Of a stretch of 64,000 bases of DNA, positions 3,601 to 31,701 are shown piece by piece. The DNA is from Fimbriosthenelais zetlandica (Eukaryota), in contig OZ365110.1 of NCBI GenBank assembly GCA_977030845.1, forward strand, positions 22,320,001 to 22,384,000, in the 5' to 3' direction. Both the position numbers and the translations under genes were made by a program. The notes beneath the pieces are model-generated. The model searched no databases. It was not told where the DNA came from and saw only the letters and a program-made list of their open reading frames with translations. Each line of letters begins with the position of its first letter. Position 1 is the first letter of the stretch.

Positions 3601-6170
3601 AATAGAAAGTTGTTTTTAATGTTTATTTCTTTTAATAACATAGGAAGATATACATGAATACATTTCCATTCTGTCCACAATTTTACACTCACATGCACCT
3701 TCATTATGATACCATGCATTGTCACTTATATTCTAACGTGCTGATAGCTCCACAATATTTAGAACACAATATTTAGAACAATAAATATTTAAGAAATTGA
3801 TATCTGCTCCATTCAAACGGTAGTCTCTATCTATTCCTATGGCCCCATGTGTAGTCTTTTAAGCTCAGGCCATCAACATTGTCTTTAGGCAAGTTTTCAT
3901 CACACTCTGAAATGAATAAAATTGAATTATAGTAATATTACTGTATGAACATGTAAAATATTAAGACAGCGATGATTAGACATATTCTGGCTGAATTGAT
4001 CACAAAAGGAAGATGTACAATATCTTCTTGATATAAAAAAGTGATTGATTGATTGATTGATTAACAGTCAGCAAAATCTCATATAATTTTAAAAGTCGAT
4101 CGGTTTATATATCAGGTATTAATATATATTATGTGTTTGCTCAAGTTAACAAAGGCGCCAAAGGTGTCGCTAAAGTCAGGGGTGACAATATAGGCTGGTG
4201 TAAGCTCTAATTTTGTATCTTAGAAATATAGAGGCCTAAGGCAGATCTTCATAGGGGTTGGGGGTTGCAAAAACCTGTCCCGCCCCTGCCCTTCCTCCCC
4301 CTTCCCTATTATTTCAATAAGTTAAAATGATTAAAGTTATATATTATAGTATATTATATAGTATATATTACTGTATGAAGATGTAAAATAACAGCAATGG
4401 TTAGACATATTCTGGCTGAATTGATCACAAAAGGAATGATAATTAAAAAATATTATTCCCCCCCTTATTTGCTCATATGTTATTAGGAATGAAAATCTAA
4501 AAATCTAAAACTACAGTAATACTTTTATTATGATTGGGTCGTGGATTTGGCCTGGGTGAGGGTGGGGGATTTGGCGGCGGTCAGGGTAGGTGGGGAGGGG
4601 GATATAATTTATGTTATCTTTTCAACTATAAAACTAATAACGAAAAATATTCGGCTGAAACCAATTGTGTCTATAATCATGTCTGATTTAAACTCCCATA
4701 TTAGATATATATTACAGTCAGTATTTTAATTCAGAAGCGTTTCACACTTTTCCCTAATGACAAGCAAATCATCAGTAGCATACTAATCCACTTGTAAGTG
4801 ACCATGCCTCTACAGTACCTGTCTTCCCCACCATAGCACGAAAACTAGTTTCCATGCTTGCTCTAAATGTATGGATGCCATAATTATAAAGGATAATGAA
4901 CCATAGTGATAGACATATAATACGAAAATGAGTAGAGGTCGCACTGTCTCTCCTCCATGACTGGTCATTGAGGAAACATGAATCCCACTACATTATGAAA
5001 CCAGTCCATGAACTCGTTGCTTTCCTTTGTCGCAGTGTAGCAATCAATAATAATTTATAGACGCCTATCGTGGTATTTGTTAAGTGTGTATTTTGATCTT
5101 TACTTTTTGGGCTAACAAAATTTGAGTGAAACGAGGGAGGCAGAGATGGGGTGGAAGAGACTAGGGATGAGGGCGGGGGTGAGGGACACACCCAGGCGGG
5201 GCTTATCAGGTCAAGACGGGGTCAGCGTCCCAGCTACTCGCATCTGTTTATAGTTTACTGTGCTCTGATTGGCTGACGGGGCCAAGCCCCCTGACCCAGT
5301 GGACCAATAGGCGGGGAAGGTTAGGCGGGTGTTATAACAGGCAGTAACGGGCCTTTCATGCAAATGTGGATCAATCTTTAACTCCTATAGATACATGTCT
5401 ATTAGCGTACCCCAATGTTTTTCGTTTTCAATGAAATTAGATGATAAACCTGACATTAAATGATAAAATTGGTATGGGGGTGATCCCCGCCACAGTTCAC
5501 TCTCCCTACCCCCACCCACCTCCCCGGGGTCCTCTTTCCCCACCCGTTTATATATGTCGGCCATAATAATTCATACACACCTATGATGGGAGTAGACAGT
5601 GCCATTCAAAGACCAGTTTCACGCTGGGTTTAGCCCCTTCATATTCAGATGACCCATTACCGTAGGGCGTTGGTCTTCAACTAGTTAGAAAAGACAAATA
5701 TAATTAATTTGCTGGGTAAAAAGAAACAAATATATACGGTTTAATATCTTACAAAATTTGATTAGTATACGAGATCTGAAGGCAAGGTATGGAATATCTG
5801 ATTCATTATAAACTTGTATTGATTCTATAAATCAACATTGTGCTTTTTAGTTTCCAAAACGGTGACATAAATTGATAATTACAGTAAAATAATAATCATA
5901 CCTGTCCATGACTTTGTTGGCCGAGTGTATATGAATTCCTCATGTGCGGACTATTTAATATATATGCATCTGAAATATCAGTAAAGGTTTGCATTATAAT
6001 ACATGTAGCTTCAATGTAGGGCCCTCAAAAACGAAGTGGTATTTTAGTGAAGAGTGCAATATCAGTATGTTATAGACAAATTAAATAATGCTTGATTATT
6101 TTTTTTAATGAAAGGTTACATATGTATTCTTAACCAGATGGATCTTCCAACAAATTAAAAAGATAATAGT

Positions 6171-6338
6171 ATATAGCTACCTATATGTACTCATACACAT
6201 ATGGGGATATATCTGGGAGGGAGGGGGACAGGGGGCAGCACTGCTGTGCTGCCTTGACCACGGACTGTGACTGTGTGACTGGTCACTTCCACTCCGCCCC
6301 TCGCTGCTACCACACACACGAACGGACTTAGAGATTTT
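6171..6338 (+). repeat. Split direct repeat A1
   Basis: ATATAGCTACCTATATG..CGGACTTAGAGATTTT, repeated at a constant offset of 3658 bp (9829-9996). Confidence 0.95.
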
Positions 6339-6359
6339 CTTACGTCTTACTTTCTCAAA

Positions 6360-7517
6360 ATGGGGAAATGCGGGGCCTGCGGGTATGAGCATAGATACCC
6401 AGGAGGTAGTTCGTGTCGTTTTGCTAAAGAAGCCGTGGAAAGGTGTAAGGCGGCGGGGGCGGAGGAGTCGAAGTGGAGGGACTTCTTGGACACTAAAAAG
6501 ATCCAAGAGGTCGAGCCGGAGGGTGCCGGGGCCGGGGAGGAGGAGACCGGTTTAGATGAACTCAGGCGTTTGAATGCGGCGCAGCGGGAGCAAATGAATA
6601 ATATGCTCCGGGAAGTGACTACCCTAACCAAGGAATTCAGGGACTTTAAATTATTAGCGTTACCTGGCCTGCCCTCTCCCTTGGAGCGGACTACGACAAT
6701 ACCTGTCACGGTGACAACACCCAGTGTCACAGTGTCAACGTCTACCCTGCCTCTCTTCCACGGTGCACCGCCTGACACGGCCTCCTCTTCTCATCTGACC
6801 GGCCCTCCCCCTTCTATGGTCAGCCACACACCAGTGCTATCGGGCACATCCCCGGCGGCCTTCCTATCCGAGCCACTGACATCGGCTCTGCAGCAACTGT
6901 CATCAGCGATGGACCCCGAAATGGCCAAGAAAAACGCAGGTATGAGTTACAGGCCTCACTATCACGTCCAACATTTACAAGAAGGGCTTTCTCTCAAACT
7001 AACTAGCCATAAATCCATGACGTACAGACAGCTGGTTCACGGTATGGTCCTAGTGGCCAGGCATATTGTTTCGACGGGAGGGGATGTGGACTCTTACCTA
7101 AGTCATATGGAGTTTCTGACTCGCCACGGTAAGGGGGGCGATTATATTGACTCGGCATACGCAGAATATGATAAACAAGTGGTGGACGATTTCATTAAGA
7201 ACCCGTCAAAGGGATTCAACGTGGGGGACCAGATGGGGACATCCCTGTGCTTCCATAACGTGACGCGGGCCTCTGTCAACCAATCACAGCCCTCAACCAC
7301 CACCACGCCCACCCAGACGGGGAACCCTGGGAATCGTAAAAGGAATAATACAGGGAAAGCCAAAGTAGTTCCACCTGAGGATTACCCGGAGGGCAACTGC
7401 TATTTCTATAACTACCTAACCTGTAATAACCCCCAAAGATGTGGGGGAGCACATGTTTGTAGAATATGTGGTGAGGGCCACAGGGCGATGAACTGCCCGA
7501 ATGGGAAACAACAGTGA
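6360..7517 (+). CDS. gag: Gag-like ORF1 of the Ngaro element (385 aa)
   Basis: First ORF after A1. It has an N-terminal CxxCxxxH..C motif, a Pro/Ser/Thr-rich middle and a C-terminal CYFYNYLTCNNPQRCGGAHVCRICGEGHRAMNC zinc-finger cluster typical of Ngaro ORF1. Confidence 0.82.
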   Translation: MGKCGACGYEHRYPGGSSCRFAKEAVERCKAAGAEESKWRDFLDTKKIQEVEPEGAGAGEEETGLDELRRLNAAQREQMNNMLREVTTLTKEFRDFKLLALPGLPSPLERTTTIPVTVTTPSVTVSTSTLPLFHGAPPDTASSSHLTGPPPSMVSHTPVLSGTSPAAFLSEPLTSALQQLSSAMDPEMAKKNAGMSYRPHYHVQHLQEGLSLKLTSHKSMTYRQLVHGMVLVARHIVSTGGDVDSYLSHMEFLTRHGKGGDYIDSAYAEYDKQVVDDFIKNPSKGFNVGDQMGTSLCFHNVTRASVNQSQPSTTTTPTQTGNPGNRKRNNTGKAKVVPPEDYPEGNCYFYNYLTCNNPQRCGGAHVCRICGEGHRAMNCPNGKQQ

Positions 7518-7571
7518 CGCCATCTTGATGCTCTCGCATCCCACGAGAACTGGGGCGAGAAGAGACGAGAC

Positions 7572-8740
7572 GTGAAGTGTCATGGCGGCGAAGGGAGGAA
7601 AACAACATGTAACAGACCTAACACATTGAAGGATTTATCCAACTATGGACCATCTGAAGGTGAGAGCGCTACCTCAGTGAACTGTGTTAACATTATCTCG
7701 AATACTGTCAATCTAGAACGTACAGGGGAGTGTGTTGATGCGGTGGAGAGGCGTGTTACTGACCTAGTTGATCCAGCCACCGGCTCAGGTATGGGAAGAC
7801 ATTGTGTACAAGAAGAGACTGCAGTACTGTGTAACTATGATCGGGGGGAAAAGGATGGGTTGTGCCGTGATTTCCCGGCCGATGTCTTACTACATAGCGG
7901 TCAGTCGTGTGTCACTGTGAGAGTGGACCGCCTAAACCATGTGGGTGGGGGTGATCTTGGCTCATGTGAGCATCGTTCTTGTAGACAATCGGGTCTTTCC
8001 AACAATAATAACACAACTGACTATGACTCTGTAAGCGATCATCTGGGAAGTGAATGCTTGTATTGTACTACTCAGATTAACCAGGGAAATAGTGAGGGTT
8101 GTGTGAAGAGCAGCGATGGATGTTGTGATGAACTCTGTGATAACGGTGATTTCTGTGAATGGATTCCTCCCTCCGCCTATAGGCCTGTCACGCGGGTCTC
8201 CACTCTGCCAATGTACAGGGAGTTTTCAGTCAATACACATGTGATTGGGGGCTACAACTACGGCAAGGGCCTAACCATGTGGACCGACGCATCTGCCACA
8301 GGTTATGGAGTTTATGGAGGCTGGGACTGGCAAGCAGGACTATTCGAGTCGTGCTATGAACTGGAGGGCTTGGGGGGAGACCCCCACAATCACTGGATAA
8401 ATATCTCCAAACCCGTCGTCCTTGCGAGGGACGATAATGTGAACTTCTGGGAACTCCTTGCAGTGTGGCAAGGAGTTCTCAGGTACTCTCAGGCTTGTAA
8501 AAACTATCACCTAGTGTCTGATAATACTCAGACAGTAGCGATGATAAACAATGCATGCAGTGTGAATTTGTCATGTATGAATATCCTGAGGGAAATCTTT
8601 GGATCACAGCTGTAAATAATGTTTACTTGACTGCTAGACATATTTGTGGGGTGGAAAATATCATCGCGGACAGATTATCTCGTGCTTACCAGATGAGTTC
8701 CATCAGTGTTTTTTCTTGTCTGTGTTGCAGTGCAAGCTAA
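7572..8740 (+). pseudogene. Pol-like ORF retaining RNase H but lacking RT; 1-bp frameshift near 8600
   Basis: RNase H motifs MWTDASATGYG, FWELLAVW and VSDNTQTV are in ORF 7572-8615, and ARHICGVENIIADRLSR is in the next frame (8555-8740). No YLDD/YxDD, LPFG or AKxD RT motifs are present in this ORF. Confidence 0.85.
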
Positions 8741-9698
8741 GCTAAAAAGACTGGATGGGGAGATAGGATCAGTGATCTCCGCGGCCTGGGCGGACTCAAC
8801 CATGTCCGTTCGCAACTCTCAGTGGAAGAAATACTTGGGGTTTTGTGCTGAGCATCACTTGGGACCCCTACCAGCGGAGATCTCGACAGTGGCTCGGTTT
8901 CTGATTTTTCTGAGCCATGATGTTAAATATGTCACCGTAAATAATTATTTGTCAGCGGTAATCTCCCTTCATAGGTTATATGGATTTGACATCGATTTTC
9001 GAGCCCCTTTTCTCATCCGCATGATTATGAAGGGCTTGCAGAACACTATAGGCTCACCGTCTCTGGGCAAGTCTGTCCTCTCTGTGAGCCAGCTTGAAAG
9101 GATTTTCTTCGCCACAGTGAGGAGCCCTGTGGACGAAGCCTGCTGGCTGGCAGTCATCATCTGCTTCCGGACACTACTCCGCAAGAGTAATGTCTTACCA
9201 GCTGGTGGGGAGAATAGGCATGTGCTGTGTCGGTCTGATGCAAAATTCAATATGGATCACGTGGTTTTCACAGTGAGGTCTTCTAAGACCAGGGGGAGGG
9301 GCGATGATGCCCTTAAGATCCCAGTAAAAAAGTTATCCAATAGTGTGTTGTGTGTATTTTCAAGACTGTGGGCGCACCTGATGAAGTACCCAGGTCCCCC
9401 ATCAGGACCGCTTCTGTGGAAGCCCCTGACTCGGGGAGCGACTCCCTTAAACTACTCTGATGTGCTCAGTTTCCTAAAAAGGGGGACTGCGGCCATTGGC
9501 CTGGACCCGGCAGCGGTTGGTCTTCATTCGCTCAGGAGAAGTGGAGCGACTCACCTATACTCACTGGGTATACCGCTTAATGATATTAGACTCATTGGTG
9601 ACTGGAGGTCTATGGCGGTCCTAGCCTACCTCTCGGTCCCCTTTTCCAGGATGCTGGACGTGGAAGCACGTTCTGCGGGCTTTCTGGACAATGTGTAA
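8706..9698 (+). CDS. Tyrosine recombinase (phage-integrase family) of the Ngaro element
   Basis: Catalytic set is visible: R (FRTLLRKSN), K (RSSKT), HxxR (GLHSLRRSGAT), W (GDWRS) and Y (LAYLS). It overlaps the RNase H end as in DIRS/Ngaro elements. The true start codon is uncertain. Confidence 0.93.
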   Translation: MFFLVCVAVQAKLKRLDGEIGSVISAAWADSTMSVRNSQWKKYLGFCAEHHLGPLPAEISTVARFLIFLSHDVKYVTVNNYLSAVISLHRLYGFDIDFRAPFLIRMIMKGLQNTIGSPSLGKSVLSVSQLERIFFATVRSPVDEACWLAVIICFRTLLRKSNVLPAGGENRHVLCRSDAKFNMDHVVFTVRSSKTRGRGDDALKIPVKKLSNSVLCVFSRLWAHLMKYPGPPSGPLLWKPLTRGATPLNYSDVLSFLKRGTAAIGLDPAAVGLHSLRRSGATHLYSLGIPLNDIRLIGDWRSMAVLAYLSVPFSRMLDVEARSAGFLDNV

Positions 9699-9760
9699 AA
9701 AAAAAAAAAAAAGAAGAAGAAAGGACGGTATCAAAGGTGATTCAGTGAGATATGGGAGTT

Positions 9761-10098
9761 GGCGGCCTTTGGCAGCCGGCATCCAATGGCAGTTGGAGTT
9801 GGGGTTGACTTATTTACCGACGATCTAGATATAGCTACCTATATGTACTCATACACATATGGGGATATATCTGGGAGGGAGGGGGACAGGGGGCAGCACT
9901 GCTGTGCTGCCTTGACCACGGACTGTGACTGTGTGACTGGTCACTTCCACTCCGCCCCTCGCTGCTACCACACACACGAACGGACTTAGAGATTTTTTTT
10001 CTTTTATTCTCTTGATTCAATAAAGGGCGGCCTTTGGCAGCCGGCATCCAATGGCAGTTGGAGTTGGGGTTGACTTATTTACCGACGATCTAGATATA
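9761..10098 (+). repeat. 3' terminal B1-A2-(spacer with AATAAA)-B2 block
   Basis: B1 9761-9833, A2 9829-9996, AATAAA 10019-10024, B2 10026-10098. B1 and A2 overlap on ATATA. Confidence 0.95.
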
Positions 10099-31471: not shown

Positions 31472-31701
31472 AAGTAGTGTAGGGAAATATGGGAGGGGAG
31501 TAGGCTAGGTTACCATAGTAGCATAAGGAAATAGGGGAGGGTAGTAGGCTAGGTTACCATAGTAGCATAAAGAAATGGGGGAGTGGAGTTGGCTAGCATG
31601 TCATAGTAGCATAGGGAAATGGGGGAGTGGAGTAGGCTTATATGCCATAGTAGTGTAAGGAAATGGGGGAGTAGAGTAGGCTAGTATGCCATAAGGAAAT
31701 G
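31472..31701. repeat. 44-bp minisatellite, about 5 copies
   Basis: Unit approximates TAGTAGCATAAGGAAATGGGGGAGTGGAGTAGGCTAGTATGCCA. Confidence 0.9.

What the first reader, a model, noticed from the sequence alone, without database searches (positions are those of the whole stretch)
6171..10098. Young, structurally perfect Ngaro-type element with gag, RNase H and YR but no reverse transcriptase
Seen: identical A and B split repeats, an open gag, a YR with all catalytic residues, and a pol-position ORF that passes from a Cys-rich leader (..WIPPSAYRPVTRVSTLPMYREFSVNTH) straight into RNase H (VIGGYNYGKGLTMWTDAS) without a stop or any RT motif. Known: Ngaro/PAT elements need RT to build the circular cDNA that YR integrates. 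Inference: this is either a one-off in-frame deletion after insertion or a replicating RT-less family that supplies its own capsid, RNase H and integrase and borrows RT in trans. The second case would be an unusual parasite class between DIRS retroelements and YR-only Crypton-like DNA elements.
Basis: partly seen in the sequence, partly recalled or inferred. Interest (0 to 1): 0.8.

Follow-up and report, generated by a model that had tools for sequence, protein, structure and literature searches.

The report
Ngaro retrotransposon copy missing reverse transcriptase
This is a recently inserted copy of a Ngaro-type jumping gene that has lost exactly its reverse transcriptase by a clean in-frame deletion, so it cannot copy itself; it is an ordinary kind of defective element unless other copies with the same deletion turn up in the genome.

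Summary
The element at 6171-10098 is real. It has perfect Ngaro-type split repeats (A1...B1-A2...B2), a gag-like ORF, a pol-position ORF and a Cre-like tyrosine recombinase with all its catalytic residues. Seven related elements from public assemblies all encode a 649-740 aa pol with reverse transcriptase (RT). In two of them a conserved H-x-I-G-G motif lies 380 residues upstream of the RNase H TDAS motif; here the gap is 14. So 366 codons (about 1.1 kb) are missing in frame, with the junction near 8250-8255. A family-specific pol HMM finds no RT remnant in any frame of the 64 kb window. The copy is not "structurally perfect". The RNase H is split by a frame change at 8598-8602, which puts its last catalytic Asp out of frame. 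The recombinase frame has no ATG before residue 33. No sibling could be found: the closest gag is 51% identical and the closest recombinase 56%, and none of 82 RNase H homologues shows the same jump. Whether this is a one-off or a replicating RT-less family therefore stays undecided. Non-autonomous tyrosine-recombinase retroelements (TOC1, SIRE) and trans-acting DIRS-1 RT are already published, so even the family reading would be a variant of a known theme.

The parts
6171..6341 (+). Split repeat A1 (true repeat 6171-6338, 168 nt)
   Evidence: Direct repeat with 9829-9999. Perfect to 6338.
6360..7517 (+). gag-like ORF1, 385 aa, with an MGKC N-terminus and a C-terminal CX2CX4HX4C knuckle
   Evidence: 39% identical to ORF1 of L001, E 2e-99. 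Best database hit is 51% identical. No Pfam hit.
7515..7518 (+). gag stop TGA followed by C; the pol frame opens in the same frame at 7518
   Evidence: Translation. The same arrangement occurs in 7 of 7 related elements.
7518..8252 (+). Pol N-terminal leader, 245 codons, Cys-rich, ending in Y-R-P-V...L-P...H-V-I-G-G
   Evidence: Its last 35 aa match L001 pol 104-138, E 2e-5. The rest has no homologue among 1.84 billion representatives and no match to the pol HMM. 0 of 20000 shuffles were stop-free.
8250..8255 (+). Deletion junction: 366 codons (RT and connection) are absent here
   Evidence: The spacing from H-x-I-G-G to the TDAS motif is 380 aa in L001 and L004 and 14 aa here. Pol HMM nodes up to 465 are unmatched.
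8253..8600 (+). RNase H, N-terminal three quarters (D of TDAS, E of W-E-L, D of S-D-N)
   Evidence: Pol HMM nodes 466-582, E 1.6e-38. The profile hits CaMV and Ty3 RNase H in the PDB. The model has pLDDT 86.7 and its top fold hits are RNase H, though weak at E about 0.1.
8598..8602 (+). Reading-frame change inside RNase H
   Evidence: HMM node 582 is shared by pieces in two frames. Alignment with intact relatives confirms it.
8600..8740 (+). RNase H C-terminus in another frame (H-I-x-G-x-x-N-x-x-A-D-x-L-S-R and a CCS tail)
   Evidence: Pol HMM nodes 582-629, E 4.6e-11. Alignment A2.
8706..9698 (+). Tyrosine recombinase ORF (open from 8706; first ATG at 8802)
   Evidence: 239 homologues, best 56% identical. 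Profile versus Cre E 8e-10, with R, K, H, R, W and Y present. Pfam Phage_integrase E 1.1e-5, below the curated cutoff.
9697..9725 (+). All-purine run (A-run followed by GAAGAAGAAAGGA), polypurine-tract-like
   Evidence: Read from the sequence. L006 has a similar run next to its B2.
9761..9833 (+). Split repeat B1
   Evidence: 73/73 identical with 10026-10098.
9829..9999 (+). Split repeat A2 (overlaps B1 by 5 nt)
10019..10024 (+). AATAAA in the 26-nt spacer between A2 and B2
   Evidence: Read from the sequence. L006 has AATAAA at the end of its A2.
10026..10098 (+). Split repeat B2, right end of the element

Best explanation
This is a recently integrated, internally deleted and therefore non-autonomous copy of a Ngaro-type tyrosine-recombinase retrotransposon.

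Shown: its parent type encodes gag, a UGA stop, and then pol in the same frame, made up of a variable leader, RT and RNase H, followed by an overlapping YR. All of this lies between split repeats A1...B1-A2...B2. In this copy 366 codons are missing in frame, from just after the conserved H-x-I-G-G motif to just before RNase H, and that removes the whole RT.

Inferred: the deletion was probably already present in the cDNA that integrated. It could have arisen by an RT template jump while copying a full-length RNA; relatives carry 'ATT G..' on both sides of the gap, a possible microhomology. Alternatively, a deleted master RNA was copied by RT supplied in trans. After the deletion, or through an assembly error, the RNase H also acquired a frame change.

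The copy keeps every cis part needed for the DIRS/Ngaro cycle: both repeat pairs, the internal B1-A2 junction that bridges the ends, and a polypurine run. It also keeps an apparently competent YR. It could therefore still be mobilised by a full-length sibling, but it cannot reverse-transcribe itself.

My working guess is a one-off or low-copy derivative, not a distinct parasite class.
For: - Repeat layout, with perfect repeats.
- Seven relatives (L001-L007) all carry a pol of 649-740 aa, or its two fragments, with RVT_1 between gag and YR.
- L006 has the identical A1/B1-A2/B2 layout and is 4900 bp long, against 3928 bp here.
- BLASTP places the end of the leader on L001 pol 104-138 and the RNase H on 492-613.
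- Motif spacing is 380 aa in relatives and 14 aa here.
- The family pol HMM matches only nodes 466-629, in two frames, and nothing else in the whole window.
- RNase H identity and YR identity are supported.
- Trans action of a YR-retroelement RT on an RT-less transcript has been shown for DIRS-1 (PMC7192593).
Against: - Only one copy is available, so neither the timing of the deletion nor its copy number is shown.
- The microhomology is inferred from relatives that are only about 50% identical, not from the true parent.
- The intact 245-codon leader, gag and YR are equally compatible with a lineage that has replicated for some time.
- An assembly collapse at 8252/8253 cannot be excluded without reads.
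Confidence: 0.75

Rival explanations
1. This is a member of a replicating RT-less Ngaro subfamily. A deleted master is transcribed and packaged by its own or a sibling's gag, reverse-transcribed by RT from full-length elements in trans, and integrated by its own or a sibling's YR.
For: - The repeats are perfect and gag, leader and YR are all open, which fits recent retrotransposition of an already deleted template.
- The deletion is in frame and exactly domain-bounded.
- DIRS-1 RT acts in trans.
- The non-autonomous YR retroelements TOC1 and SIRE exist.
Against: - No second copy in the window.
- No sibling in protein or contig collections.
- None of 82 RNase H homologues shows the jump from about node 130 to node 466.
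- This copy's RNase H is frame-shifted.
- No Ngaro-type RT donor lies within 64 kb.
- Intact ORFs are expected in any very young copy, whether or not selection is acting.
Confidence: 0.3
2. A full-length element inserted, and afterwards lost 1098 bp by an ordinary genomic deletion.
For: Deletions between short repeats do occur in genomes. An in-frame outcome has a 1 in 3 chance.
Against: There are zero differences in 241 nt of paired repeats, which leaves little time. Large deletions are far rarer than substitutions per unit time, whereas template-switch deletions are frequent during reverse transcription (established knowledge for retroviruses and LTR elements).
Confidence: 0.15
3. Assembly artefact: a collapse or mis-join removed the RT segment, and a homopolymer miscall made the frame change.
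For: The frame change lies at a short T run, which is a typical long-read error site.
Against: A collapse would need repeated sequence at both break points, and none was found inside the element other than the A and B repeats. The junction also preserves the reading frame.
Confidence: 0.05
4. The 'leader' is a very divergent RT, so the element is autonomous.
For: A forced global MAFFT alignment lined up a few leader residues with RT motifs, for example R-x-x-T-x-C-x-R-P, V-D and D-F.
Against: - No RVT hit in Pfam at E<=5.
- The family pol HMM at maximum sensitivity gives no alignment of the leader to nodes 130-465.
- The leader's end matches the pre-RT motif instead.
- The 245 aa are too few for the leader plus the RT fingers, palm, thumb and connection, which take 380 aa in relatives.
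Confidence: 0.02
5. The copy is a retro-copied spliced subgenomic RNA, with the RT segment removed as an intron.
For: The removed segment is precise and in frame.
Against: Relatives show no conserved GT...AG at the two borders.
Confidence: 0.03

Closest known systems
Ngaro-type YR retrotransposons (e.g. DrNgaro1; Xenopus DIRS-53_XT; PMC9210276)
   Same: Split direct repeats A1...B1-A2-B2 that are 100% identical; a gag-like ORF; RNase H; a Cre-like YR; no methyltransferase domain; no target-site duplication.
   Different: The RT domain, 366 codons, is absent. RNase H is frame-shifted. There is no SGNH hydrolase ORF of the amphibian type.
TOC1 (non-autonomous DIRS element of Chlamydomonas) and SIRE (truncated VIPER of Trypanosoma cruzi)
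   Same: Derivatives of YR retroelements that lack RT and depend on an autonomous partner.
   Different: Those are proven multi-copy families that have lost most or all coding capacity. Here gag and YR remain open and the copy number is unknown.
INT1 of the Chlamydomonas MT+ locus (PMC9940879)
   Same: A DIRS-derived sequence in which RT is missing but RNase H and YR remain.
   Different: INT1 is DIRS-type with a methyltransferase domain. It sits in a tandem 17 kb repeat and is not flanked by functional element termini.
trDIRS-1 helper/donor construct (Malicki et al. 2020, PMC7192593)
   Same: An RT-less YR retroelement transcript that is reverse-transcribed by endogenous RT in trans.
   Different: It is an engineered DIRS-1 with ITR/ICR ends, and a full transposition cycle of the truncated construct was not observed.
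Crypton DNA transposons
   Same: They encode a related eukaryotic YR.
   Different: Cryptons have no gag, no RNase H and no split repeats. The element here keeps all the cis features of a retroelement, so it is not an intermediate in any tested sense.
TR-GAG, LARD and TRIM non-autonomous LTR retrotransposons (from my own knowledge, not checked here)
   Same: Terminal repeats are kept and pol is lost; mobilisation is in trans; some keep gag.
   Different: They belong to a different order of retroelements, using integrase rather than YR.

Membership tests
Ngaro (YR retrotransposon, order DIRS) | Split direct repeats: A1 at the 5' end and B1-A2-B2 at the 3' end, with A1=A2 and B1=B2 | tested here: met
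   A is 168/168 and B is 73/73 identical, and B1/A2 abut with a 5-nt overlap. The relative L006 has the same layout. Definition from PMC9210276.
Ngaro (YR retrotransposon, order DIRS) | Tyrosine recombinase ORF with the catalytic R-K-H-R-(H/W)-Y set | tested here: met
   Profile versus Cre, E 8e-10 over the full length. R159, K194, H274, R277, W300 and Y308 are present.
Ngaro (YR retrotransposon, order DIRS) | Reverse transcriptase domain in ORF2 | tested here: not met
   No RVT hit. Pol HMM nodes 1-465 are unmatched in all six frames. 366 codons are missing relative to L001 and L004. I file it as a deletion derivative, not as an autonomous member.
Ngaro (YR retrotransposon, order DIRS) | RNase H fused downstream of RT | tested here: inconclusive
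   The domain is present and all four D/E/D/D positions are encoded. It is supported by PDB profile hits and a fold model. However, it is split between two frames at 8598-8602.
Ngaro (YR retrotransposon, order DIRS) | No methyltransferase-like domain (this separates Ngaro from DIRS-like and PAT-like elements) | tested here: met
   RNase H ends at 8740 and already overlaps the YR ORF, which starts at 8706. No Pfam domain was found. The pol of relatives ends about 30 aa after L-S-R.
Ngaro (YR retrotransposon, order DIRS) | Placement in the Ngaro clade by RT phylogeny | not testable with these tools
   RT is absent. As a proxy, the nearest YR, gag and RNase H homologues all lie in elements with the Ngaro layout.
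Replicating non-autonomous retroelement family | Several copies at different loci sharing the same internal deletion | not testable with these tools
   The source genome is not searchable here. There is no other copy in the window and no sibling in the public collections.
Replicating non-autonomous retroelement family | An autonomous partner with matching terminal repeats | not testable with these tools
   No Ngaro-type RT in the 64 kb window. The B-repeat 28-mer is absent from metagenome contigs.
Crypton (YR DNA transposon) | YR as the only element-encoded function, with no retroelement genes or repeats | tested here: not met
   gag, RNase H and the split repeats are all present.

The most novel reading that the evidence does not exclude
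The copy belongs to a replicating RT-less Ngaro lineage that keeps its own gag and YR under selection and borrows only RT (and RNase H) from full-length elements. In a more extreme version, it can also excise and reinsert as DNA through its own YR acting on its ends, in the manner of a Crypton.
Probability: 0.25. Interest if true: 0.55.

Novelty: new member of a known kind. Interest (0 to 1): 0.3.

Why it matters
If this is only a single defective copy, it is routine annotation: a young Ngaro insertion that marks recent activity of the family in this genome. If copies with the same junction are numerous, it would be a natural counterpart of the DIRS-1 helper/donor experiment. It would show which Ngaro functions must be supplied in cis (gag? 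YR?) and which can be borrowed (RT). It would also add a gag-and-YR-retaining type to the short list of non-autonomous YR retroelements. Separately, the conserved in-frame UGA-C between gag and pol in every relative examined suggests stop-codon readthrough as the Gag-Pol strategy of this clade. That is cheaply testable.

Tried and rejected
- **Global MAFFT alignment of ORF2 to full-length pols.** It spread the leader over the RT and produced tempting motif matches. I rejected these after the family HMM gave no leader alignment at all, and after local BLASTP placed the leader's end on the pre-RT H-x-I-G-G motif.
- **Search for siblings.** The YR and gag homologue searches gave best hits of 56% and 51% identity. 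An exhaustive phmmer search of ORF2 matched only the RNase H part, and only one hit, a relative's pol, matched a second stretch. Two metagenome scans, one with ORF2 peptides and one with a B-repeat 28-mer, found nothing. One viral-contig scan with gag found nothing.
- **Independent RT-less pols among the 82 RNase H homologues.** All are colinear full-length proteins or C-terminal fragments.
- **L008.** It looked RT-poor in the precomputed Pfam column. In fact it carries the N-terminal half of RT followed by unrelated sequence, a different rearrangement.
- **Splicing as the cause of the deletion.** Relatives have no conserved GT/AG at the borders.
- **Rfam on the window.** No hits.
- **The only RT in the window (14251-16200).** It is a LINE-type RT unrelated to Ngaro pol, so it is not a plausible helper.
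- **Host species.** It could not be identified with these tools.
Full report
**What is there.** The stretch 6171-10098 stands out from its surroundings by composition: about 50% G+C against 35-40% on either side. It carries two pairs of direct repeats in the order A1 ... B1-A2 ... B2.
- A1 is 6171-6341 and A2 is 9829-9999.
- B1 is 9761-9833 and B2 is 10026-10098.
- B is 73/73 identical.
- A is perfect over 168 nt. The one mismatch the repeat finder reports lies past the true end of the repeat.
- B1 and A2 overlap by five bases, 'atata'. The same five bases form the outer ends of the element, so joining B2 to A1 would recreate the internal B1-A2 junction.

This is the split-direct-repeat layout that defines Ngaro-type elements (PMC9210276). 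No flanking target duplication is visible. No second copy, or fragment of one, lies in the window.

**Genes.**
- ORF1 (6360-7517, 385 aa) is 39% identical (E 2e-99) to ORF1 of a related element and ends in a CX2CX4HX4C knuckle.
- Its TGA stop is followed directly, in the same frame, by the pol-position reading frame (7518-8615).
- The last ORF (8706-9698) has 239 homologues, the best 56% identical.
- A profile of 14 of these homologues aligns with Cre recombinase over the whole length (E 8e-10). The window protein keeps the Arg, Lys, His-x-x-Arg, Trp and Tyr that correspond to the Cre catalytic residues.

**The missing RT.** I fetched contigs that encode the nearest recombinase and gag homologues. 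All of them show gag, then a pol of 649-740 aa (or two fragments of one) with Pfam RVT_1, then the recombinase. These are L001-L003, L004, L005, L006 and L007. L006 lies in a 619 kb contig. It has the same A1/B1-A2/B2 repeats, also perfect and also with a 5-nt overlap, and measures 4900 bp against 3928 bp here.

Local comparison with the L001 pol gives two matches:
- Window residues 221-255 (Y-R-P-V ... L-P ... H-V-I-G-G) match pol 104-138 (E 2e-5).
- Window residues 243-361 match pol 492-613, the RNase H (E 5e-38, 57% identity).

The H-x-I-G-G motif is conserved in most full-length pols, just before the RT region. From it to the (W/F)-T-D-A-S motif of RNase H there are 380 residues in both L001 and L004, and 14 in the window. 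So 366 codons, or 1098 nt, are absent and the frame is kept. The junction lies at about 8250-8255. In relatives both borders read 'ATT G..', so a short microhomology at the break is possible. It cannot be shown without the true parent.

**Is an RT hidden in the leader?** A forced global alignment suggested a few colinear residues, so I tested this directly.
- I built an HMM from 13 full-length pols (634 nodes) and ran it with all filters off. It matches the window ORF only at nodes 466-582 (E 1.6e-38).
- The leader on its own gives no alignment.
- A six-frame scan of all 64 kb gives only two significant hits: 7518-8612 (nodes 466-582) and 8525-8737 (nodes 582-629).
- Pfam finds no RVT family at E<=1 or at E<=5.

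The leader is nevertheless a genuine open frame: 245 codons, and 0 of 20000 shuffles were stop-free. It has no homologue among 1.84 billion cluster representatives, apart from its last stretch in one relative. That fits the hypervariable, Cys/Ser/Asp-rich N-terminal leaders seen in the relatives.

The RNase H assignment rests on several lines:
- the conserved D (TDAS), E (W-E-L), D (S-D-N) and D (A-D-x-L-S-R) positions;
- profile hits to the RNase H parts of cauliflower mosaic virus RT (E 5e-4) and of Ty3 (E about 4e-3);
- a confident model (pLDDT 86.7) whose best structural neighbours are almost all RNase H domains, though only at E about 0.1.

However, homology switches reading frame at 8598-8602. 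Up to E-I-F it is in the frame of 7518. From W-I-T onward it is in the frame of 8555-8740. As written, the ORF stops at 8615 and lacks the segment that holds the fourth catalytic Asp. Relatives L001, L004 and L006 are continuous at this point. The site is a short T run, so a sequencing error is possible. The recombinase frame also has no ATG upstream of codon 33, while the conserved N-terminal block starts at about codon 17. How it is translated is open.

**One-off or family?** This is the point on which the finding's interest depends, and I could not settle it.
- The source genome is not in any searchable collection. The best gag hit is 51% identical and the best recombinase hit 56%.
- Two metagenome scans and one viral-contig scan found nothing.
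- Among 82 RNase H homologues, none shows a jump from the pre-RT region to RNase H. All are full-length or colinear fragments.

What can be said by inference is limited. Zero differences in 241 nt of paired repeats puts divergence below about 1.2% (95% bound), so the insertion is young. In that time a 1.1 kb genomic deletion is much less likely than a deletion already carried by the integrating cDNA. Such a cDNA arises in one of two ways: by template switching while a full-length RNA is copied, which gives a one-off; or by copying a deleted master RNA with RT supplied in trans, which gives a family. Open gag, leader and YR frames do not discriminate between these, because a copy this young has had little time to decay. 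My estimates:
- one-off or low-copy: about 0.6-0.65;
- replicating family: about 0.3;
- artefact: about 0.05.

**Mechanism.** In the DIRS/Ngaro model the transcript is reverse-transcribed, the internal junction (here B1-A2) serves to bridge the two ends, and the YR inserts the product without a target duplication. For DIRS-1 the need for the internal complementary region, and single-stranded cDNA intermediates, have been shown experimentally (PMC7192593). This copy keeps all of these cis parts and a YR with a complete active site. It lacks RT and, as assembled, a complete RNase H. It is therefore non-autonomous. Mobilisation would need a full-length sibling. The only RT in the window is a LINE-type enzyme at 14251-16200 that is unrelated to Ngaro pol.

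**Comparison with what is known.** Dependence on RT supplied in trans is not new for this order.
- TOC1 is described as a non-autonomous DIRS element (PMC9940879).
- INT1 is a DIRS derivative that keeps RNase H, methyltransferase and YR but lacks RT (PMC9940879).
- SIRE is a truncated non-autonomous VIPER (PMC6681497).
- Endogenous DIRS-1 RT made cDNA from a truncated, RT-less DIRS-1 transcript (PMC7192593).
- Xenopus Ngaro copies with a shortened RT domain are mentioned in PMC9210276.

A Ngaro derivative that keeps gag and YR while losing only RT would, if multi-copy, be a new variant of this theme and not a new class. Nothing links it to Cryptons beyond the shared recombinase family.

**Verdict.** The RT deletion is real in the assembly and precisely mapped. 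The more exciting interpretation is neither supported nor excluded. Interest is modest (0.3) until the source genome is searched for the junction.

Noticed in passing
window 7515-7518; L001 1400-1403, L004 1433-1436, L005 1094-1097, L006 3810-3813, L007 1496-1499, L008 2427-2430: In all 7 elements gag ends in TGA and the pol frame is open in the same frame immediately after it. In 6 of 7 the next base is C, and in 5 of 7 the context is CAG TGA C. This suggests Gag-Pol is made by UGA readthrough in this Ngaro clade. A literature search for 'Ngaro' plus 'readthrough' found nothing relevant.
   Followed up: partly
window 6360-6425 and the gag starts of L001, L004, L007, L008: The gag N-terminus M-G-(K/L)-C-x-x-C-G-(Y/F)-x-H-P-x-P-G-x-K-x-C-R-F is conserved across elements that are otherwise 35-50% identical. 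The Met-Gly start looks like an N-myristoylation signal, as in retroviral Gag.
   Followed up: no
window 9697-9725; L006 about 7295-7336: An all-purine run (an A-run followed by GAAGAAGAA...GG) resembles a polypurine tract. In the window it lies 35 nt upstream of B1. In L006 it abuts B2. The difference in position is unexplained.
   Followed up: no
window 10019-10024; L006 7278-7283: An AATAAA signal lies at or just after the end of A2, ahead of B2, in both elements. It may be the polyadenylation signal of the element's transcript.
   Followed up: no
window 6160-6175 and 10090-10110; L006 2466-2516 and 7405-7435: L006 sits inside a (TA)n microsatellite, and its B repeat ends and A repeat starts in 'atat'. 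The window element's ends share 'atata'. This suggests a TA-rich crossover core for the recombinase, with no target duplication.
   Followed up: partly
window 8706-8802: The recombinase frame opens at 8706 but has no ATG before 8802 (codon 33). The conserved N-terminal block L-D-x-x-(V/I)-x-x-x-I-x-x-A-W starts at about codon 17. Translation may depend on a non-AUG start, or on coupling to the overlapping pol frame.
   Followed up: no
window 14251-16594, with 13141-13785: A 649-aa ORF has a strong LINE-type RVT_1 match (8.7e-36), no upstream endonuclease ORF, and no similarity to Ngaro pol, so it is probably a 5'-truncated non-LTR retrotransposon. Just upstream is a 101-nt tandem array of 6.4 copies. 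The whole 12-18 kb stretch has strongly negative GC skew.
   Followed up: partly
L008 2430-4569 (Logan ERR14707600): A relative whose pol matches HMM nodes 47-317 (leader end plus the N-terminal half of RT). It then continues for about 330 aa with no similarity to pol and has no RNase H. This is a different rearranged derivative.
   Followed up: partly
window 20622-20962 and 31483-31693: Two further tandem arrays: period 185 with 1.8 copies, and period 44 with 4.8 copies. Not examined.
   Followed up: no
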